Shown here: positions 1,675-33,300 of the stretch, piece after piece
Position numbering within the stretch: position 1 is the first letter of the stretch
How the letters are laid out: each line of letters starts with the position of its first letter
From: Haplodiscus bocki
Lineage: Eukaryota
DNA: 64,000 nt
Direction: 5' to 3'
NCBI GenBank assembly: GCA_965655095.1
Contig: OZ296656.1
Coordinates: forward strand, 15,624,001 to 15,688,000
Made by a program: the position numbers and the translations under genes
The notes under the pieces: generated by a model
The model's input: the letters and a program-made list of their open reading frames with translations, nothing else
Told to the model about the DNA's origin: nothing
The model's database searches: none

Positions 1675-4619
1675 CATTCTCAATTGGCTTTAAAACTTGA
1701 TCTGATTCAAAAACTTATATTAAAAACGGATTGTTCTTTTGTGTTCATAATGGATGGAATCATGGGTGGTTGGTTTTTTAGGGCATTGGGCATTTTGTCC
1801 TTGGTACTTTGGGTATTTTGGGCGTGGGTATCTTGGGGTGGAACCGGAATTATGTACTTGTTCGAAAGGTGAAAAGTTGAACCACGATTTTGTTGATGTC
1901 AAACCTGAAATGATTTCAAACCGGGAGTATTTCCATGTTTCAATTTTTCAGTCCATTTTCAATGTCAAAATAACCTGAAAAATATTACGTCCATTTTATC
2001 TGCACGTGAAGTGACCACTCACAATTTGAAAATTAAATGGTTGAAGAACAATCACCAGAAGAAATCTCATCGAGTTGAAGGCAACGTTTCAGAGCGTTAA
2101 ACCAGCTTGAAAGACCATTGCTGCTCAATGCTCAATTTGGCTCCGTTTGGAATTTCACCGCAAATGATAGCGAAGAGTCGTGAGCCTTTTTTAAAAGAGC
2201 TGACGATAAAACACTTTTGACTATTTTTCCGCAATTTTCATACAAAAACAGAAGTGACTATCTTTGCAGACAGAATATGAATCAGTCATTGCGAAGGTCA
2301 CCGCTGTCAAATCATTAGCATAAATTTAACTAATTTCACGCATGTAGAGCTGAAAAAGATTTCTTCCCAAACAAACCTAAAAATTTGCATAATGTCGCTT
2401 TAAGATTAGTGGCATGTATTTTTTTGCGTCACGGAAAATAACGAGTTGAGGATTGGTTATGGTGATGGTTAGCTGTACTGATACATTGTACAGCGGGTAG
2501 TTTGTAGATTGCGTTCGAGAAAGAATATTCTTGTATTGCTGTAATTATGCCTCCTTTTCTATATTTCGTGTGCCAAGTAAAGCGACGCCACTTCTGTTTG
2601 CGCTCTGCGTAATTCTTATAGCTGTGTTGGTACCCAGCAAGAGGAACGTAATCAATTCTGTTTTGAAATTCAATTAGGCTGGTTGAGAAAAAACAGACAC
2701 AGAAGCGAAGGTAGTAAACGGGCCATTTACTGAAATGTTTTCACTTCATGCTGCCGCACAAAGTATTTGAACATCTGGGCCATTTGTTCACATTTTCTTG
2801 CTATTTTCTCATGCTATAAAATGTATAAAAAGCAAAGACAGTATAGGCAAAGTGTAGGCGGCGTCGGTGTTATGTAGCACTAGAGGTAGCCGCCACAGCA
2901 AGCGAATTTTTGAGAAGTGAAATCATGTTACATCAATAGGAGGATGCGTTGCATAATTAAGGTTTTTAGCAAGTCCAATTTTGCGTAATATTTGCGTGTC
3001 TTGGATCTGAAGTAATAAGTGAATTTACAATGTAGGATAACATGGAATTTGAAAATATGTTAAATAAATGTGCACCAAATTTACAATACACATTAAGTTT
3101 TGTCCATTTTTCTGAGATTCCTTAGTAGCATTAGCAAAAGTATGATTCGTGAAAAGCCACTATTTTTTAGATTTATATTAGCATTTTAGAATTTTTATGG
3201 AATCTCATTTTTGTCTGTTTTCTGGAAAAAAAGCATTCGCGCTTTCTACATAGAGTAGCAGTAATTTCATTTTCAGACTGGTAAATATAGTTGTGAAATA
3301 AATGTATTTATTTCGTAAAATTTCGTGGTTCTGAGTATGAGTGGACACGAAAAGGTCAAAAAGGCGACGCCATTTACCATTTTTTTTATTATCATTGATC
3401 AGTGCTGAGATTGTTCACTTGTGTATTTACAAATTTCACCAGAACATCGAAATACTCTGTATCCATAATATAAAGATCTCTCAAATTAAGAAGGTAATTC
3501 TGTTCAAACTATCAGTCTTCAAACATTGTTCTTTTCTCGCCGCTAGTAATGAGATTGAATTCCTGTGAGATATCTCAGTTCTTTTTTTTCACTGGTATGG
3601 TTGATCTCTTCTAATTAATTTTGTAATTAACATTTCGTTTACATGTAGCTGTCGAACAGTAAATAGTTTGTCTTTTTGCCTCATACCCGTCGAGGTTCCA
3701 ACACTTTTTTTTTGAAAATAATTCAATATTAGGTTTTACTGTTCTGCAATGGATCACACGAGCGGGCAAGATTTTGTTATTTTCGTGAGTTTCGAAATTG
3801 CAAAATCTGCGTTCCCTCTAGAAATAAAATTTAATCGTCCGGCGTGGCTGCATGCCAAAATTTTCTGCACGCGGCCTAATATTAAGCTTCTTTTCTCGTT
3901 TTGAATGAAATGAACTACAGCGGTACGTACTTGAAATTCTGTCTAAATATTTATTTCGAAGACGAACCTTTAGCTATTTTGATTCAAAAATGTTTTGTAA
4001 GCTGCCTGGATTGCGTTCAACCAGTGTTTATTCGAACTCTCGTTACCCAGATATTCTGTGCAGTGGCAGGGATTAACTTTCATAATTTTCCGACGGACAA
4101 TTTGAAAATCAACGATGTTTTCAGTTACGTCGTTCGTTGAAAGTTTTTTCTCGAAGACCAATGGTTGAATTGGGCCCATTCAATGCTGATTCAATTACTT
4201 GCTGCCCGAAGCGTCTTATAAGCTGCCGGGATGGTCTAATTTCATCTTCTCTCGCAAAATTTTTAAAGTTGTTTGAAAAGCTGAAGATGTTTATACTTGT
4301 GTCGCTCGTTAAAAGTGGTTTTGGTCGGGTGATGTACTGTAGTAAGAGCCTACTTTTGCAGTGACTTTAATTTTTTGTAAGTTGACAGAATCGCATCGAA
4401 CTGATCCAATTTTGACAGTTGTTTGAATTGGTAAGTTCATAGGAATCTGCTTAGTTCACAAATGTAGTAAGTTCATGAGAATCTAAAACCGACTTGCAGT
4501 AAAATATCTTGGCACTATCATTGACACGGTGTCAACGATAATGCCAAGATGTTTTACTGCATTTTTCGTTGTTATTCTTTTTCAGTATCAATACCTAATG
4601 TTATGATTTCTCATTGATC

Positions 4620-4845
4620 TTACGTGATGAGTTTTTTGCACTCAATTTGTGTTTATTTGTTTCCATCGAGTGTTCCAGTTTTGTTCTCAGTTACCCTTGT
4701 TGCTCATCCGATGTAAAGTTTGAGGTAACGACAATAGTATCGTCAGCAAACAATGTAATATTGAGAACTGTAGTGATTTCTGGTACGTCATTGAGGTAAA
4801 CTAAAGAGTAGTGGTCCCTAGACTGATCCTTGAGGAACACGAGAA
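4620..4845 (-). mobile_element. Degenerate LINE (CR1/L2-like) reverse transcriptase fragment
   Basis: Minus strand reads VPQGSV*GPLLF...YLNDVP...LFADDT, with a stop and a frameshift. Confidence 0.8.
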
Positions 4846-6599: not shown

Positions 6600-7900
6600 A
6601 TTTTAGAAATGGAACTTGCAATAATATAGAAAAGCGCTGTCGACATATAATTAGTGTAGTTTCTAGACCATTTTTTAAATTAGGTGCGATTTGTTAACGA
6701 ATGAACTCAATTATGTTCGTGCGTCGTAGCATAAATATATATATATTTGACATGCAACCCGCAGATGCTACAATAATTTTCGCAGCTTTATGAGTGTAAT
6801 AAAGTGCTGTATTATTGAATGGGGTGTGAGTAAAACAATGGAATACTTCAAGTCGTGTCGTCTAAATGTGAATTCCACAAAAATTGATTTTCTACTTCTA
6901 AATAAACCTGCTACAAACCCTTTCTTGGAAAATAAAAGCATTGATGTTCCAAACCAAACAAATGAAGTGTCATGTAACACCAAAAACTCATGTGTAATCT
7001 TGGACAAAAGTCTTACTTTCCAGGAAGACATCAAATCATGTCTGCGGAAAATGGCTTGTGGCATTAAAACTATAAATAGCATCAAGAACTGCCTTCCTTT
7101 ATCAACACGTTTCTTTCTAGTGGAGGCAGTTGTCATCAATCATGTCCACTATCCAGCAGTGCTACTTAATGGACTCAGAATTTATTATCTTGATGGACCT
7201 ACTTGAATCGTAGAATGTTTGACCACCGCTACGATCTCAAATTTCTATCAAATATTAGCGTTTACGTTTCTTCATCTTGAAGCTATCTGTTTTCTGTGGA
7301 AAGTAAAGTACTCACATACCCTGCTTGCAGTTTCATATTCAATAAAAACTTCAGTAGCTCACTTAAGTTTTCATCACAGTAGTGATTTTCTCAAAGAAAA
7401 GTTTAAACAAAACTAGCAATGAACTTTTCAGAAAAATTCGCCCTTTTTACTCTGATATATATCAGAATGAACCTCTGCATAACTAACGTTTTTAAAAGAT
7501 GTGTGAGTTTCTTTTTAAAGGAACAATTTGCAGAGGATAAATCAGTTGAAGCCTATGGGAAAGTTCAGGGACAGACTCCAGATTCAATTGATTTCGTTTC
7601 GGATTGAATGTGGAATAATGTTTTAAATTGCCATAAACTAGCCTTGTATGAGTCTCTGTAATTATTCGGTCATTGTTGGGAAATTTAGTGTTTTTTTATT
7701 TCAGCATTCAAGTTGACTTTTTGTTCTCTACCACTTAAATATGATTTTGAGAAGTCGTATCGTGGGCCTCTGATATCTATGTGTAGGACTTCATCGTAAC
7801 AACTGGGTTATTGGTCTCATCAAAAAATTTCGAGAGGTGACACATTGTAAATGCATAGTTTACTTTTTCGGACAATTTTTTTGTAATAAATTGATAATAG
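6600..7900 (+). mobile_element. Degenerate LINE (L2/CR1-like) RT C-terminal region and 3' end
   Basis: ORF 6790-7206 reads LNVNSTKIDFL...VILDKSLTFQEDIKSCLRKMACGIKTI, resembling LINE RT domain 6-7/thumb (LNxxKT, GVxLDxxLxF); boundaries approximate. Confidence 0.65.
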
Positions 7901-26433: not shown

Positions 26434-27585
26434 CTATTAATATTAATTTTGTGACATTACGGTTTTCTTTGCCTAAAAACTTGGAAAATTTTGAGTTTTT
26501 TCACGTTTATTTACAACAGGTGGCTTTATTACCTCGTTTCTTTTTGAAGATTATCTCTGAAGAAATAAGCTCTTTTTGTTGAGTTAATAATATGGCTGTG
26601 CATTTTGGACCGGTAAAGGCAAAGAGAACCAACTTTAATTTTCATTATACGGTACACAGCATCCGCGTGAAATGTTTTTTTTTTCAATTGCGCCAATTGA
26701 GCTTTTTTCAGTAGAAAATCAGAAAATTGTTGTACAATTTATTATCATAATTATATCGATCTTTGTGGACATAATGTTTAGTTGACATACGGGTTTTATG
26801 TTTGACCGGCCCTGTGCAGGTAGCAACATTGTTGATTGTTTTGATAGTTTAATATTAATAAATAGATGTTAGACAATTAGAAGTAGAGTGATAATTATTT
26901 TTTATTTTATTCTCATGCCCTTTTCACACTTTACCTGAACTAAACCAACTTTCGTTTTTCTTCTCGACTCAATTCATGCATTGTGGAACATTTTGCTCAT
27001 TTTGATTTGCTAGTACAAGATGTGACGTACAGCTAGTCTCGATTATAAGCAACCTGAGTTTGAACGAGGAGCTCGTTGCTTGGAATTTTTTGTTTTCTGA
27101 GCCTCAAAATTGCTTATTGGTGCTTCATTTTGAAAGTTTTGGTCGGGAGTAGAAGCTTTCTAGAGGAAAAGGTTCAAAGCATTTATGGAAGTGATCTAAT
27201 CCAATCCTGTAATGACTGGCGAAAGCGTCAATCAACGAGACACGCGTAAGACGAGAAGAGTTCAGTTCTTTTGGCGATGAACCAATCACGGGACGACTTG
27301 ATTGCGCTGAAGTCATGAGCTGATCATCGTAAATGAAATTTATGTAAATGTTCTGAATTTGTAATTTGCTACCGTTTTTCTAGGCCTAGCTATTCCTTTG
27401 AAATTGCTTACGTTTTTTCATTTTCGCAGCTATCTTGCTAATAAGTTGTTGTCGATAGTGGGAACTGGGTGTACGCAATAGCCGAAAGACACTTAAGACC
27501 AACATGAAAAATGCTAAGATGCCCAGTGTTCTTCAATTTGATTGGCTTAGTGAATATAGCTGAGCTGTTTCAATTATGCAATCAT

Positions 27586-30309
27586 TTTTTAACATATTTT
27601 TGGAAAAGCCGAGGGAAAACCCCTTGCCCGCCCGTTTACCAGTACGTTACCAGGCCTTTTCGCTGACCTGGAGGTTGACAATTATTTCAGCATGACCACC
27701 AGGGTGACATTGCCATACGTAATTGCCACTGTCCAGTTAGGGTGTCTGGGGGTTGCACCCAGTAAAAAACACTCAGGTTGGCATCTTGTGTCACGTGGCC
27801 GTTTGAACCACGACCTGACAGCGCCTCTAGTCATTACGTCAAATGCCTTTGACCTACGAGTGTTTCCACCCGCGAAAATCAAGCTATGCAAGATTTTCGG
27901 CACCAAGAAGTGCTTCAAAAGGAAAACCATTCGCTGCGGCTTCAAAGGAGCTTCAGTTAAAGCATCAAGACCACCCTGGAGCTCCAGATATTTTTTGGAA
28001 TAGCTGAAGCTTATACCCAAACGCTTGGAAGATTTATTTTCATCACGAATGGGCATTAATCGTCCTGGAGTGTTTAAGAAGGGCTTTGTTGCATAAAATA
28101 AACTCTAGCTCTAGTTGTAAATTTCATCGAGAACGCAGCACACTTCTCATTCATTTTCAGGCCATAGCCAGAAGCGACATCCGTGAACTCTAAGCAGAGA
28201 CTGTAAACCTGTTTCCGTCTTAGCAATCAGCTGTATCATCAGCGTAAGCTAGATTATTCAGTGTCCGATCACCAATTCGAAAATCGACTTTGTCCGAGAG
28301 GTTAGCAAAACACAAGTCTAGCGTCATGTTGAACAGAATCGGTGAGAGTGGGTCGCCTTGCCTTACCCCTCTCGTGGGATGGAAAACTTCACTTTTCTGG
28401 CCCTTGAATCATATTCGTGTGGTTGCTTCGTTATTTATATTTTGCACACATGACAGGAATTTGAAAGCAATTTTTTTTTGCTCTCATTGCTGTTATCAGA
28501 GAGTCATGAGCCACAGAATTGAAAGCTTTTTGCAGATCTAGGAAGCATATTGTCAACAATTTTCTCGTTTTTTGCACGGTTTGCACCCACCCCATCAATC
28601 CTTTTGAACACCTTTTGACTCAGAGAAAGGTCAACAGCCCTGTCCAGCCTTGGAGCTAGGATCTTGTGGAAGAGACGAGCAACATGTGAACAGATACTGA
28701 TGGGCCGCTGCTCAAGACCGAATGCATCGTCAATTTTCGGGATCAGAATAGTCCGACCCTAGGTCGTTTCAGATGGCAAACACTCAATATATAACCAGAG
28801 GGTATATTGCGCACAGAGTATTTCTTTGCTCAATTGCTTTGACTTCCAGAAACTTTACTCTGTCGACACCAGAAGCACTCCTCGACATGTTGTTCTGCTC
28901 ACGTTCATTTTCCAAACTTTGAATAGGACGGCACACGATTCGAACTGATTCTGAAGGTATGCTGTCCCCGAACCAACTTCAACGGATTGTCTTCCAATCA
29001 CACATAAAGATGCCATTGAACCAACCTCAACAGGGAATTGTTCCGCAGCAACCGAAGATGCCGACCCGGGCCAATCTCAACAAAATGTTCTTCGACAATG
29101 CCCTCTTGCAGAAAGACCGATCTCCAAGCACTCGTCATCGTGTCGGGGTTGACGGAGTTTGTTTTGTCGACAGACTCTTCAGTCCATCTACGAGAAAGCT
29201 ACCTCTGATGCCCTTCTACGATCTTTTTTTTGTAGATTTCTACCAATCTACCGTGGTATTTCCTCAAATTTTTTGGACTTGCATTCGCTGCTCTTGGAAA
29301 GCCATCTAGGCTTGGGATCCCTTTCGGGTTCCTTTTCTGGCTTGTCAATGCGTTTCGCTATCTCGTTTTAAATAAATACAATCAACCCCTTTTTATCAAC
29401 AAATTCAGGCGAAGGTTCTTCGAACTGATACCAAACAAATATCAGGGTGTCCTCAAGTTCTTTAGTGAGCTCAAGGTATCCGTTCTCCATCTCCGGAGAA
29501 GCTCGAGATATATTTAGCCATGTAGTGGTGAGAACTCGGGTTGAGATGGCTCAAGTCTTCTTAAACCTCTGGGAGGCGAAAAGTTCCTTGAAACTCTCAA
29601 TTGATCGTGAAAGGTTAAACCTCATTCCTTAATCGAGAGGACGTTCCTCGACTCGATACCTCACTCACTTTGCCCAAGATCAAGAGTTTCTGATTGTGAC
29701 GTCAAACTACAAGTAGTTCTTCGTCAGACCGTCGTACCGGGCTTCCAACCCAAGTTTCCATTCGCTTGCATGAGCTAGACGGAGGTGTTGCGGCGTGCCA
29801 ATCGCTCCCTTAGAAGGACCACGACCGCATAAGTCACAAATTTTTCCCTAGCCAACCCGTTTTGCACTATTTGCTAGCTGATTCAGTGGAATCAACTATT
29901 TTCTGGTCATGTTCAGTTTCAAATTTTCTCATCTTAGTGGGTTGCAGGCAGACTCGTCCTTTTGAAAGACTTATCCTTGCCGTTAGTCGGACTAAACCAC
30001 TTAGGGGTTACAGGTAGGTTTGCCCTTAACTCTAACCACAAGAAGGTGGCAGTAGGAGTGCCGATCCAAGCGCATCACGAGGTCTATTATTTCATGCTGA
30101 TCCGATCCTCGAAGTTCAACGGTTTCAACCAAGAATCATCAACTCCGCAATCATGAGTACCACTAACTGCCAAGGCACAGCCAACGATCAGTAGCAGATC
30201 CCTATAGTAGGTGTAACACTACAGTTGAGGACCCGCCAATGAACAATAGCGCTTCTCAATTAGCCCATGAGTACCACTGAGGTATCGCGTCTGCACTTAA
30301 AAGAGTCAT
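27586..30309 (-). mobile_element. Degenerate R2-clade non-LTR retrotransposon lacking the endonuclease domain, outside rDNA
   Basis: Minus strand shows a C2H2 finger (CDLCGR...QHLRLAH) and Myb-like SDEEL, then RPISICSHVARLFHKILAPRL, FLDLQKAFNSVAH, RGVRQGDPLSPILFN, YADD (28235-28246) and APLKPQ...LVPKILH. There are many frameshifts and stops. A 28S-like leader sits at the 5' end; the 3' boundary is approximate. Confidence 0.85.
29978..30307 (-). ncRNA. HDV-like self-cleaving ribozyme of R2 (probably decayed)
   Basis: P1 GACUCU / AGAGUU with a G-U first pair; P2 UGCC / GGCA; P3 ACC / GGU around loop UUCUUGU; P4 AAACC / GGUUU; J4/2 CUAA; long J1/2. Confidence 0.7.
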
Positions 30310-33300
30310 TAAGAGCTTTCGCGACCCATTTCCGCCGGTGCCGTTCAACTAGCCGAGCGCTCAATAAACCGACTGCTGTTGTATGTGAAAATTACATTGC
30401 GCGTAAATGACTTCTGCATTGTGTTTAATCCAATTTTATGGACCTATCTTCAAGTAAATAGTATGAAATTTGAACAAGATGCCCGAATAACAACTCCAGA
30501 ATATTTTTGCGCATCTCAATTTTGGTCAAAATTTTGAAGGAAAAAATAGGAAAGTAAGTTTTGTGATAAAACCTCGTAGGGTAAGCATAAGGTCTATTGC
30601 TTGAAAATTTTCTTCGATTTTTGTCGAATTGACGGTAGAACGAGTGACGGGACCGCAAATGAAATTAGGAGCAAGTATGAAAATATGGCTACGCCTACTT
30701 TCTGAGAACTACTTTATGTGAACTTAATTCATTCTTATTCTCTTTTGCTTGTGAAGAAAAGTTCTTTACTTTCGTTCATTTCTTAGTGGGGATGATAAGC
30801 TATTGAATTTGCTTCCAAGCGGGTTGATGGTTTTAATTTTTCTCTGACATTTGTTTTCGCTTGATACTTTTCAAAGTCAGTCACTTCTCGTAAATTAAGC
30901 ACCATTTTACTTCTTCGGCAAAAAGCGATTAGCTTCAGGCCTATAGACTTTACTTTTTTCTTCATACTTCGCAGATCGATTCGTGACATGTTGCCTGAGA
31001 GATTAGGGTGTGAACATAAATAGCGAGTACAGTAACTTCATTCTAATTCTTAACGAATGAACGGGAATCTCGATTTACTTTTGTTCACTCTGAACAGTAT
31101 TCTAATTGTTTGAATTTTTCACTGTAATTCATCAATTTTATTTGCATTTTGTTCTGCTTCTTCAAAATTATTTCATCCGCATCAAATTGGCTCAATTCTA
31201 TTTTTTCCACGATAATTTCTTAACGGTTATTACCAAGCATTATTGATGACCGTCTTTTTCATGGTGGAAAACTAGTCAGTATTGGTGTTGAATTATAATA
31301 GTTCAATCCGTTTTATGATGAAAAATACCGACTAAACCGAGGAGTTGATTTGCAGCAGTAAAATACCTCAGCTTAAATAATTTAAGGTAGAAAATGAAAC
31401 ATCAAAAATTTGTTTTCAAATCCAAATTTATAAACGTATAATTAATTAAAAATACATTAAAATGTGAATGAGACCCTTGACTAACTCCTGGATGTTTTTT
31501 GGCCGCCCAAATTTGCTAAAAAAAAGCGTTGAATGGGAAATCGGGAAGTGCGTATTTCGAAAAAAAACGTTCATTTCAAAAACAACCCTAAGTTTCGTGC
31601 AGAAGGGATTTTTAGAACGACACACGTTTTATACGCATTGTACACCAAATTTAGTAAAATTAAGCCTTCAGTCTTGCGAACTGTGCAATCGCAGATTTTA
31701 TATGGAAAAACCCTGAATGTTGAATGATATTTCTTCCATATGTGAAATATAGCGGAAAATAGCTAGTAGGTAATCGCTCTCCCGAGGATAGGCAATTTAG
31801 ATTAGGCTCTTTCGTCATTGCCATTGTGTGCGGCGAATGGATGCAAAAATCAGCTTCACTTTTTCGCAGAGCTGTCGACAGGAATTGTTAATCCTTTTAT
31901 GAAGTGCCAGTAGAGATTGTTGTACAATATTTATAACTCAGATAGTACAGCAGACGGAGACTGTGGCATATCTCAGCGGTAGTAACAAATGCTTATAAAG
32001 TTGAAAGTTGCCTTGTTTACAATCTGGTGACACTGATCTACAATTGTCCGTTAGATTAAATTTGTTTTGATTTTTACACGACAACTCGTTACAATCATTA
32101 TCGGTAGGGTCCGTGCGCATTCACACTGTGTACAAACCGTACGTTGTTGTCTCAAGTACTTTGGCTGTTTTTGAAGAACCTTCAATGTTATCGTGCTGTT
32201 CATGTGCTATGTTACTTCACGAATTGACACATACACTCGGTGGTCCTTCAGGCAAACCCTTGGTTATGTAGTCCCCGAGGCCTTTGCGGTTTAATGCACA
32301 AAAGTGACATTTGTAGCTAGTTGGCGTGACTCTGCTGAGTGCTTTATTGTAGTAGTTGTACTTTGTTCTCTCGCATACGTGCTCCTCTCTTTAAATGTTA
32401 GATCATGTTTCTTTCGTAGGTTGGAAAGTGATTTAAAATTTCAAACCAAATTGCTGCATCGACTTGAACATATGGTGAACATGCCAATTTTTAGTGTCAT
32501 CGTCAAATGTGTAAAAAGTACGCTGCATGGCAGAAAAGGCCAAATTAGAGGTTATGTTAACAAAATTGTGGTATGTTTAGTTTGCTGTTCTTGAGAGAAA
32601 ACAGCTCGCTTTCATGGTCTACACATTTATATGGGATTACTGAGTTTTCAAGTCTACTGAACCGTGATGTCTGCAAAAAGTAGATACTACATGTGCATAA
32701 TTCAGCTCTTTTCTTGACTAGATTTGAGATCAGTTTAACATGCTGGGGATCGAAATTTACTCAAACTGGGTGAATTGTGCGCTTAGTTTGATGAACTTAT
32801 CAGTCAAAAAATTCTAACTTTTTGGGACAAATTAGTGAAAAATTCAGTCATCAAAAATCGAAAGAACCGGGTCAACGAAAGAAATCTTAACTGATGCTCT
32901 TTGATTAACATTGTTATCCAAAAAAGCCTTTTTTTCGATTTAAAAGGAAGCAAGAAATCTAGAGAAATCCTTTAAATTTTTTATGTTTTTCACAGAAGCA
33001 TAAAATCGACCAATATTTGCAGATTTGACCTGATCAGATAACCATTATAAAAGGAATTTTGATCAAATTTTTTGATTGAATTGTTTTTAATCGCGTTGTC
33101 AACAACTTTTTAGATCGGGAAATTTTTGTCTTGGGTTAATTCGGCATATAATGCGGTTTAAAATGTGAAAATTTAAAATTTTTTGATTTGTTAAGAACAA
33201 ACTGAATGATTTCAATGAAAATAGTTTATATATAAAAACTAAATGCGAAAAAATCATTCAAACTATCCCTCAATTGAACATCACTGCTCTCTCATATAGC

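What the first reader, a model, noticed from the sequence alone, without database searches (positions are those of the whole stretch)
29978..30309. R2 element outside rDNA keeps a 28S-derived leader and an HDV-like ribozyme
Seen: the element's 5' end reads ATGACTCTTTTAAG (30309-30296, minus), a 13/14 match to the 28S R2 target ATGACTCTCTTAAG(GTAGC). About 250 nt downstream lies CTGCC-ACC-TTCTTGT-GGT-TAGAGTT-AAGGGCAAACC...GGTTT...CTAA-CGGCA, which folds as HDV-like P2/P3/P1/P4 using the 28S-derived GACTCT as the P1 5' strand. Known: R2 ribozymes can cleave within upstream 28S sequence, so the RNA carries a short rRNA leader. Inference: a 5'-complete R2 transcript was inserted at a non-rDNA site, recording the cleavage position about 12-13 nt upstream of the insertion site.
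Basis: partly seen in the sequence, partly recalled or inferred. Interest (0 to 1): 0.75.

Follow-up and report, generated by a model that had tools for sequence, protein, structure and literature searches.

The report
Fossil R2 copy keeps ribozyme-cut leader
A dead copy of the R2 jumping gene, sitting outside the ribosomal RNA genes of what is probably a coral, still starts with 14 bases of 28S rRNA, and four other stray copies start at the same base, so together they record where R2's self-cutting RNA trims the transcript; the mechanism itself is already known.

Summary
Window 30309-27585 (minus strand) is a decayed R2 copy that is not in rDNA. It opens with ATGACTCTTTTAAG, a 13/14 match to the 28S bases just upstream of the R2 site.

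- **Intact relatives:** copies with a 1112-aa ORF sit in the canonical 28S site elsewhere in this genome. They are about 82% identical to the window copy.
- **Shared 5' end:** all five 5'-complete non-rDNA copies (72-96% identical to the rDNA copies) begin at the same 28S base, T(-14)GACTCTC. Two of them have clear target-site duplications, so they are real retrotranspositions.
- **Ribozyme core:** about 250 nt downstream, the intact copies have a full HDV-like core. P1' is GAGAGUUG, complementary to 28S UGACUCUC. P3/L3 is ACC-UUCCCGU-GGU, J4/2 is CUAA, and P2 is CUGCC/GGCAG.
- **Other hosts:** two R2s from other hosts have the same layout. Their P2 sequences are entirely different but still complementary, and their P1' still pairs with the same 28S bases.
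- **State of the window copy:** its fold is degraded, with a U-U mismatch in P1, a 4-bp P2, and L3 changed from CC to UU.

R2 ribozymes that cut within upstream 28S are already published (Eickbush 2013), including a site at -13. This is a new member of a known kind. No cleavage assay or RNA data were available.

The parts
27585..30309 (-). Decayed, internally deleted R2 retrotransposon copy at a non-rDNA site (2725 bp; intact rDNA copies are about 4080 bp)
   Evidence: blastn to intact rDNA copies covers 30309-29505, 29506-27788 and 27785-27595 at 78-82% identity. About 93 bp are missing at 29505 and about 1.13 kb at 27788/27785. The reading frame is broken many times. The 3' end was mapped at 27585.
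30296..30309 (-). 28S-derived leader ATGACTCTTTTAAG, corresponding to 28S positions -15 to -2 with C(-7) changed to T
   Evidence: Homology with the other copies starts here. The sequence upstream is not 28S-like.
30301..30308 (-). P1 5' strand, UGACUCUU. The inferred cleavage site is just 5' of 30308 (-14) or just 5' of 30307 (-13)
   Evidence: Pairs with 30034-30027. Four other non-rDNA copies share this 5' end.
30053..30300 (-). J1/2, a long joining region of 248 nt
   Evidence: The region aligns with the other copies.
30048..30052 (-). P2 5' strand, CUGCC
   Evidence: Only 4 of 5 pairs are kept in this copy.
30035..30047 (-). P3-L3-P3' (ACC-UUCUUGU-GGU). Intact copies have UUCCCGU in L3
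   Evidence: The intact copies' CCUUCCCGUGG matches at 9 of 11 positions the most conserved R2 ribozyme motif, CCUCCUCGUGG, quoted in PMC5035012.
30027..30034 (-). P1 3' strand (P1'), UAGAGUUA
   Evidence: pairing pattern -o-----x with the leader.
29989..30025 (-). P4 stem-loop (GGGC-AAACC ... GGUUU-A-GUCC)
   Evidence: The P4 base pairs are kept in 89% of cells across 14 copies, with both G-U and G-C forms.
29983..29986 (-). J4/2, CUAA, with the putative catalytic cytidine at 29986
   Evidence: Conserved in the rDNA copies, L002, L006, L047 and L052.
29978..29981 (-). P2 3' strand, GGCA. A 16-nt deletion directly downstream removes the P2 extension found in intact copies
29930..29932 (-). Surviving in-frame ATG, equivalent to the second Met of the intact ORF. 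The first ATG is lost
28223..28758 (-). Reverse-transcriptase remnant spread over three frames
   Evidence: translations. The intact homologue matches Pfam RVT_1.
27585..27610 (-). A-rich 3' end of the element, followed by non-28S DNA

Best explanation
The stretch is the 5' end of an old, dead R2 retrotransposon copy that integrated outside the rDNA by target-primed reverse transcription.

R2 has no promoter of its own. It is transcribed as part of the 28S precursor and freed by an HDV-like ribozyme. In this R2 lineage the 5' strand of ribozyme helix P1 is supplied by 28S bases -14 to -7 (UGACUCUC). These pair with GAGAGUUG, which lies directly after P3 about 250 nt into the element. The cut therefore falls inside 28S, and the mature RNA carries 13-14 nt of rRNA.

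At a cognate 28S target, the cDNA copy of this leader can anneal to the target, so it leaves no trace. At a non-cognate site it is copied in as extra DNA. The window copy and four other stray copies thus mark the 5' end of the RNA template, and by inference the cut site, most likely 5' of U(-14) and possibly 5' of G(-13).

Shown here: element identity, non-rDNA location, a common 5' end in independent insertions, and conservation and cross-lineage covariation of the fold. Inferred: that the ribozyme is what makes this end, and that it is catalytically active in the intact copies. The window copy's own ribozyme is mutated and probably inactive.
For: 1. **Identity and intact relatives.** Intact copies lie in 28S as ...AACTATGACTCTCTTAAG|TGGAGACG... 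and ...AAAATAAAAAA|TAGCCAAATGCC. They carry a 1112-aa ORF. Its best PDB match is R2Bm over the RT and endonuclease regions, E 1e-100, against 1e-20 for LINE-1.
2. **Shared 5' end.** All five full-length non-rDNA copies begin at the same 28S base. They are 96.4, 86.7, 81.8, 79.1 and 72.2% identical to the rDNA copy. Their junctions read A-ATGACTCT (window), T-TTGATTCTC, AC-GACTCTC plus ATGACTCT in tandem, TT-TGACTCTC and TTTT-TGACTCTC. Their flanks are unrelated to each other.
3. **Real insertions.** Two copies have target-site duplications of about 33 and about 25 bp; 0 of 1000 shuffles score as well. In one of them the duplication ends directly against T(-14).
4. **Descriptor hits.** A strict HDV-type descriptor (P3 of 3 bp, L3 matching UNCNNGN, 7-bp P1, 5-bp P2, CNRA next to P2') hits the rDNA copies, L002, L006 and L028. 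In all but the 5'-truncated L028 the 28S GACTCTC-type heptamer (GATTCTC in L002) is among the P1 candidates.
5. **Other hosts.** Two R2s from other hosts share P3, L3 and CUAA. Their P2 helices are GGAGAA/UUCUCC and CUGUGC/GCACAG, against CUGCC/GGCAG here. Their P1' sequences, GGGGUCG and GGGAGUUG, differ from GAGAGUUG only by changes that keep pairing with the invariant 28S UGACUCU(C). One of them carries a junction duplication that starts at T(-14).
6. **Pairing within the genome.** 88% of cells are paired across 14 copies, against 40-48% when the partners are slid.
7. **Rfam.** The only ribozyme match on the intact copy is to an HDV-like family, drz-agam-1, at 18.1 bits and E 0.39, which is below threshold.
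8. **Literature.** R2 ribozymes cut 9-36 nt upstream in 28S, with a -13 site in Nasonia vitripennis (PMC3774820).
Against: - No RNA data and no cleavage assay. No run holding this sequence is on record as RNA, and the four runs found are kept only as contigs.
- There is no Rfam hit at gathering threshold, and no ribozyme-family match even at E<=10 around the window copy.
- Covariation within the genome is weak: the shuffle controls are not exceeded.
- The minimum-free-energy fold of the core is no more stable than shuffles, z = +1.06.
- P1.1 cannot be placed convincingly. Two to five nucleotides separate P1' from the GG that could form it.
- A U-G closing pair at the cut site would be unusual for HDV-like ribozymes, which normally have G-U.
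- The T at -14 could instead be a non-templated addition by the reverse transcriptase.
- The window copy has no detectable target-site duplication.
- An alternative P1 partner, AAUUCUC, exists inside the element at about +184 in the rDNA lineage, though not in the other lineages.
Confidence: 0.8

Rival explanations
1. The common 5' end at -14 is real, but something other than the ribozyme makes it. Candidates are a reverse-transcriptase stop at a structured or modified 28S nucleotide, or a host RNase site in the pre-rRNA. On this view the HDV-like fold is inactive or coincidental.
For: There is no direct evidence of catalysis and no RNA reads. There is no Rfam hit above threshold. P1.1 is unclear, and U at +1 is atypical.
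Against: The end coincides to within a nucleotide with the base of a 7-8 bp P1 next to a canonical P3/L3/J4/2 core. P1' stays complementary to the same 28S bases in three R2 lineages while P2 covaries completely. Related R2 ribozymes with 28S-derived P1 strands have been shown to cleave in vitro (PMC3774820).
Confidence: 0.1
2. The leader belonged to the element itself. The master copy that produced the window copy carried an internal duplicate of the 28S bases at its 5' junction, as the R2 in L052 does, and cleavage took place in that duplicate. The leader would then not record a cut within the 28S gene proper.
For: L052 shows exactly such a duplicate, TTAAGG+TT+TGACTCTCTTAAGG. Such duplications and their consequences are described in PMC3774820. 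The masters of the old lineages no longer exist for inspection.
Against: Every rDNA copy in this genome has a single copy of the sequence, which is the 28S gene's own. The youngest stray copy, 96% identical to the rDNA copies, has the same leader.
Confidence: 0.06
3. The copy is a piece of R2-inserted rDNA that recombination moved to this site, with a breakpoint that happens to fall 14 nt upstream of the element. On this view it is not a retrotransposition of a processed RNA.
For: The window copy has no detectable target-site duplication. R2 copies flanked by fragmented 28S or non-rRNA sequences are reported in birds (PMC5035012).
Against: The 3' side carries no 28S at all. Five independent copies share the same 5' boundary. 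Two of them have target-site duplications.
Confidence: 0.03

Closest known systems
R2 HDV-like ribozymes that cleave within upstream 28S rRNA (Eickbush, Burke and Eickbush 2013, PMC3774820), in particular the -13 site of Nasonia vitripennis R2
   Same: The P1 5' strand is supplied by 28S sequence and J1/2 is long. The layout of P3, L3, J4/2 and P2 is the same. The cut lies 9-36 nt upstream of the insertion site, so the RNA carries an rRNA leader, and the 5' junctions in rDNA are uniform. The leader is proposed to anneal to the target to prime second-strand synthesis.
   Different: P1 here is a full 7-8 bp, whereas the Nasonia P1 is reported as 4 nt with an atypical P3 and L3. The host is probably a coral. 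The best-supported cut site is -14, with a U-G closing pair, rather than -13. Activity has not been tested. The evidence for the RNA end comes from fossil non-rDNA insertions rather than from gels.
Drosophila R2 ribozyme (Eickbush and Eickbush 2010) and the HDV-like ribozymes of other non-LTR elements (Ruminski et al. 2011)
   Same: An HDV-like double pseudoknot sits in the 5' UTR just upstream of the ORF; here the first ATG is about 30 nt after P2'. The conserved P3/L3 motif, CCUCCUCGUGG, compares with CCUUCCCGUGG here.
   Different: The Drosophila ribozyme lies entirely within the element and cuts exactly at the 28S/R2 junction, so its RNA has no rRNA leader.
R2 and R1 copies outside the rDNA (Stage and Eickbush 2009, PMC2718515; Kojima et al. 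2016, PMC5035012)
   Same: Occasional R2 copies at non-28S sites are frequently incomplete (Drosophila) or have disrupted coding regions (birds). For R1, non-28S target sites share short identity with the 28S site.
   Different: Here there are at least 20 stray 3' ends spanning 74-98% identity. Five are full length and keep the 28S leader. Neither paper, as far as read here, uses such copies to map the RNA 5' end.

Membership tests
R2 clade of non-LTR retrotransposons | Site-specific insertion at the conserved 28S site (...CTCTTAAGG|TAGCCAAATGCC...) | tested here: met
   Ten near-identical copies are flanked 3' by TAGCCAAATGCC, and the 5'-complete ones are flanked 5' by ...GGGAGTAACTATGACTCTCTTAA(G/A). 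The window copy itself is not in 28S, but it is 82% identical to those copies.
R2 clade of non-LTR retrotransposons | A single ORF with a reverse transcriptase followed by a C-terminal restriction-like endonuclease region | tested here: met
   One 1112-aa ORF with Pfam RVT_1. phmmer aligns residues 384-1105 to residues 382-1103 of Bombyx R2 (8gh6), E 1e-100. R2Tg and other R2 structures come next, and LINE-1 matches the RT only at 1e-20. Individual endonuclease catalytic residues were not inspected.
R2 clade of non-LTR retrotransposons | N-terminal C2H2 zinc finger or fingers plus a Myb motif | tested here: inconclusive
   One CX2C-X12-HX4H finger followed by RWSDEE... can be seen in the translations. 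Pfam reports no ZF or Myb domain for this protein.
R2 clade of non-LTR retrotransposons | A precise 3' junction with an A-rich end, and variable 5' truncation of copies | tested here: met
HDV-like self-cleaving ribozyme | Strand order P1-P2-P3-L3-P3'-P1'-P4-J4/2-P2', with P1 of 6-7 bp or more, P3 of 3 bp and P2 of 5 bp or more | tested here: met
   Met in the intact rDNA copies, L002, L006, L047 and L052. The window copy meets it only if one mismatch is allowed in each of P1 and P2.
HDV-like self-cleaving ribozyme | Conserved active-site nucleotides: U, CC and G in L3, and the catalytic C in J4/2 followed by purine-A | tested here: met
   Intact copies have UUCCCGU and CUAA. The window copy keeps CUAA, but its L3 is UUCUUGU, so the CC is lost.
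HDV-like self-cleaving ribozyme | P1.1 mini-helix between L3 and the nucleotides after P1' | tested here: inconclusive
   The only GG that could pair with the L3 CC lies 2-5 nt after P1' and overlaps the base of P4. No convincing placement was found.
HDV-like self-cleaving ribozyme | Match to a curated covariance model | tested here: inconclusive
   Nothing in the window at gathering threshold, and no ribozyme-family match at E<=10 around the finding. The intact copy gives a sub-threshold match to drz-agam-1: 18.1 bits against a gathering score of 37, E 0.39. These models include neither a 250-nt J1/2 nor pseudoknots.
HDV-like self-cleaving ribozyme | Self-cleavage at the base of P1 | not testable with these tools
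   Only indirect evidence is available: five non-rDNA copies begin at the base of P1.
HDV-like self-cleaving ribozyme | Helices supported by compensatory change | tested here: met
   Across three R2 lineages P2 is CUGCC/GGCAG, GGAGAA/UUCUCC and CUGUGC/GCACAG. The differences in P1' all keep pairing with 28S. Within this genome there is conservation only, not exceeding the shuffles.

The most novel reading that the evidence does not exclude
The R2 lineage of this host, probably a coral, has for a long time inserted at non-rDNA sites as well as in 28S. There are at least 20 stray copies at 74-98% identity, some with 25-35 bp target-site duplications and TAG-like sequence at the nick. Its ribozyme uses a fixed cut at U(-14) with an inverted U-G closing pair in place of the canonical G-U. 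That cut site has stayed the same through more than 25% sequence divergence and is shared with R2s of at least two other hosts. The stray copies would then be a genome-borne series of 5' end records, from which ribozyme cut sites could be read directly off genome assemblies for any R2 with leaky targeting.
Probability: 0.35. Interest if true: 0.5.

Novelty: new member of a known kind. Interest (0 to 1): 0.38.

Why it matters
R2 is the model for target-primed reverse transcription and is being developed for site-specific transgene insertion. The nature of the template's 5' end affects how the 5' junction forms (PMC3774820, PMC11331408). These fossil copies give in vivo, assay-free evidence that full-length R2 cDNA carries the rRNA leader predicted by the 28S-P1 ribozyme model. 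They also extend that model to a probable cnidarian lineage. The practical point is that non-rDNA R2 copies in any assembly can be used to map the cut site. The biology itself is not new.

Tried and rejected
- **Rfam on the window.** The whole window at gathering threshold gave nothing, and 29500-30600 at E<=10 gave only two chance matches. A three-source Rfam call failed.
- **Strict HDV descriptor on the window.** No hit. Shuffled windows give 0.6 hits on average, so the descriptor alone is weak. Relaxed by one mismatch it gives 8 hits on the window's minus strand.
- **RNAalifold on 14 within-genome copies.** It recovered only the base of P4. Covariation within the genome did not exceed shuffles. 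The minimum-free-energy fold of the core is not unusually stable.
- **28S similarity of the window flanks.** Rejected.
- **Target-site duplication for the window copy, L016 and L017.** None is significant.
- **Paralogous empty site for the window insertion.** The nearest flanks are unique and the DNA further out is repeats.
- **RNA evidence.** No holder is on record as RNA, and the four runs are contigs of unknown kind. Laying them showed presence and variants but no molecule ends. One contig in X1 joins unrelated sequence to ACTCTCTTAAG; this was not interpretable.
- **Other R2 relatives.** The Paramuricea R2 (L048) and L050 have a different P1' that could not be paired with -14 to -7 by eye, so they were left out. 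L051 has no 28S flank.
- **Search for the 28S rRNA family in the window's own genome.** The call failed. The 28S was identified from flanks and from a partial LSU match instead.
Full report
**1. What is in the window**

On the minus strand, 30309-30296 reads ATGACTCTTTTAAG. A search of the window's own genome with 29950-30330 found seven other full matches, and every one of them begins to align at exactly 30309.

Five of those copies are preceded by ...GCGGGTAAACGGCGGGAGTAACT, which is 28S rRNA, and read ATGACTCTCTTAA(G/A)|TGGAGACGCG.... Their 3' ends read ...CTCAAAATAAAAAA|TAGCCAAATGCCTCGTC. This is the canonical R2 site.

- Two extended loci each hold a single intact 1112-aa ORF with Pfam RVT_1.
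- The best solved-structure relatives are Bombyx R2 (8gh6, E 1e-100, aligned from the RT to within 11 residues of the C-terminus) and bird R2s. LINE-1 ORF2p matches the RT only, at 1e-20.
- The N-terminus shows one C2H2 finger followed by an RWSDEE Myb-like start.

The family is therefore R2.

**2. State of the window copy**

The window copy spans 30309-27585 and is about 82% identical to the rDNA copies. It lacks about 93 bp at 29505 and about 1.13 kb at 27788/27785, and its frame is broken repeatedly.

It is not in rDNA. No rRNA family is found in the window, and neither flank resembles 28S more than shuffled sequence does (298/1000 and 982/1000 shuffles score as well). The only 28S sequence present is the 14-nt leader.

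**3. The leader is a shared property of stray copies**

Searches with the 5' end of an rDNA copy found five 5'-complete copies outside rDNA. Their flanks are unrelated to each other, and their identities to the rDNA copy are 96.4, 86.7, 81.8 (window), 79.1 and 72.2%. The junctions are:

| Copy | 5' junction |
|---|---|
| Window | ...CTCTTA\|ATGACTCTTTTAAG |
| C1:79.18 Mb | ...ACATGT\|TTGATTCTCTTAAA |
| C826 | ...TTAAAC\|ACGACTCTCTTAAATGGAGACGCG\|ATGACTCTTTTAAATGGAGACGCG... (the first 24 nt twice in tandem) |
| C1:48.72 Mb | ...TTATGTT\|TGACTCTCTTAAG |
| C9:91.63 Mb | ...AAATTTT\|TGACTCTCTTAAA |

- The last two copies have target-site duplications of about 33 and about 25 bp (0 of 1000 shuffles as good). 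They are therefore true retrotranspositions.
- In the C9 copy the duplication runs right up to T(-14).
- The window copy, C1:79.18 Mb and C826 show no significant duplication.
- None of these targets contains 28S, so the leader must have come in with the RNA template.
- T precedes GACTCTC in five of the six junction instances. That places the RNA end at U(-14), counting from AAGG|TAGC, or at G(-13) if the T is an untemplated addition.

**4. The ribozyme**

In the intact copies the sequence following a 251-nt J1/2 is:

CUGCC (P2) - ACC (P3) - UUCCCGU (L3) - GGU (P3') - GAGAGUUG (P1') - a 43-nt region containing P4 (GGGC...GUCC) - CUAA (J4/2) - C - GGCAG (P2') - AGGAG

The final AGGAG extends P2 by pairing with CUCCU. 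P1' pairs with 28S UGACUCUC as U-G, G-U and then six Watson-Crick pairs.

- A strict HDV-type descriptor written here hits the rDNA copies, L002, L006 and L028. Except in the 5'-truncated L028, the 28S GACTCTC-type heptamer (GATTCTC in L002) is among the P1 candidates.
- The P3/L3 block CCUUCCCGUGG matches at 9 of 11 positions the CCUCCUCGUGG motif reported as the most conserved sequence of the R2 ribozymes of Drosophila and zebra finch (PMC5035012).
- On 14 copies from this genome, 88% of cells in P2, P3 and the base of P4 are paired, against 40-48% when partners are slid. Covariation does not exceed the shuffle controls.
- RNAalifold finds only the base of P4.
- The nested minimum-free-energy fold is not unusually stable. 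That is not informative for a double pseudoknot.
- On the intact copy, Rfam gives only a sub-threshold match to the HDV-like family drz-agam-1 (18.1 bits, E 0.39). Around the window copy it gives no ribozyme match at all.

**5. Cross-lineage support**

Contigs encoding more distant R2 proteins (41% and 31% identity) were fetched.

| Feature | This genome | L047 | L052 |
|---|---|---|---|
| P2 | CUGCC/GGCAG | GGAGAA/UUCUCC | CUGUGC/GCACAG |
| P3 | ACC/GGU | ACC/GGU | ACC/GGU |
| L3 | UUCCCGU | UUCUCGU | UGCACGC |
| P1' | GAGAGUUG | GGGGUCG | GGGAGUUG |
| P1' partner in 28S | UGACUCUC | UGACUCU | UGACUCUC |
| J4/2 | CUAA | CUAA | CUAA |

- L047 is inserted in 28S.
- The 5' junction of L052 reads ...TTAAGG-TT-TGACTCTCTTAAGG-..., a duplicate of the leader that starts at T(-14).
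- P2 is therefore fully compensatory between lineages.
- Every difference in P1' (A/G opposite U, U/C opposite G) keeps pairing with the invariant rRNA.
- All three lineages place a G opposite U(-14). This favours -14 as the cut site.

**6. The window copy's own fold**

- P1 is UGACUCUU/UAGAGUUA, with a U-U mismatch at the top.
- P2 keeps 4 of 5 pairs, and a 16-nt deletion removes its extension.
- L3 has become UUCUUGU, so both cytidines are lost.

This is what is expected of a neutral fossil, and this copy probably would not cleave.

**7. Relation to what is known**

Eickbush, Burke and Eickbush (2013) showed that many R2 ribozymes take their P1 5' strand from 28S and cut 9-36 nt upstream of the insertion site. 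Most cut at -28, and Nasonia vitripennis cuts at -13. They proposed that the retained rRNA leader lets the cDNA anneal to the target, which gives uniform 5' junctions. They also described 28S duplications at junctions.

Non-rDNA R2 copies are known in several Drosophila species and in birds. I found no paper that uses such copies to read the cut site. Absence from this library is weak evidence.

The finding is a new, well-supported member of a known kind. Its particular points are a full-length P1 at -14/-13, a probable U-G closing pair, and a series of stray insertions that all keep the leader.

**8. Host**

- A 4134-nt contig from a Cyphastrea sp. coral metagenome (Ga0126343; bioRxiv 10.1101/391565) encodes a 96%-identical R2 protein. 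Its first base is T(-14).
- The nearest named protein is from the octocoral Paramuricea.
- The window's genome is thus probably a stony coral.
- The contig start at -14 in a DNA assembly is what a graph assembler would give if copies with different upstream contexts converge at that base. It could also be coincidence.

**9. What is not shown**

There is no RNA evidence. The only runs that hold the element are contigs of unknown library type. Catalysis, the exact cut (-14 or -13) and P1.1 remain inferred or open.

Noticed in passing
G000 loci L065-L084 (e.g. C1:41827600, C11:45592425, C2:107443873, C3:100139105, C1:79179209, C1:139896617): At least 20 diverged R2 3' ends (74-98% identity) lie at non-rDNA sites, against 10 near-identical ones in 28S. 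Four of the stray 3' flanks begin TAG directly after the A tail, and two more contain GGTAGC or TTAAGG. This suggests partial mimicry of the 28S nick site.
   Followed up: partly
L053:838-870 with 4581-4613; L054:887-881 region with 4714-4739: Two old full-length stray R2 copies have long target-site duplications, about 33 bp and about 25 bp. In L053, 7 extra bases (TTATGTT) lie between the duplication and the leader.
   Followed up: yes
L006 (G000:C826, about 7705-7730, minus strand): The youngest stray copy (96% identical to the rDNA copies) carries the first 24 nt of the RNA twice in tandem, ACGACTCTCTTAAATGGAGACGCG then ATGACTCTTTTAAATGGAGACGCG. It looks as if the reverse transcriptase re-copied the template end.
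   Followed up: partly
L054:1069-1242 (G000:C9, about 91629568-91629741): A 59-nt unit of the J1/2 region (CAGAGTTGATGATTCTTGGTTGG...CGAGGATCGGATC) is present 2.9 times in tandem in one old copy and once in the rDNA lineage.
   Followed up: partly
L052:2552-2595 (ENA ERZ25072999 contig, another host): An R2 in 28S whose 5' junction reads TTAAGG-TT-TGACTCTCTTAAGG. It is a duplicated 14-nt leader of the kind predicted when a leader-bearing cDNA is joined without annealing.
   Followed up: partly
L085:1-20 (JGI Ga0126343_10024079, Cyphastrea sp. 2 coral metagenome): A contig with a 96%-identical R2 starts exactly at T(-14). It ends in a poly(A) run followed by error-ridden 28S.
   Followed up: partly
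L055-L064 (rDNA copies on C3, C4, C5, C89, C304, C3106): The A tails at the R2/28S 3' junction vary from 0 to about 25 extra A among otherwise identical copies. The 5' junctions come in two forms, TTAAG|T and TTAAA|T, and both forms also appear in stray copies.
   Followed up: no
L003:1504, run X1 (table 7): One contig in a second sample joins unrelated sequence...CAACTAATTGATC, to ACTCTCTTAAG... It may be a further stray copy starting at -15/-14 with a G-to-C change. The run type is unknown.
   Followed up: no
   Followed up: no
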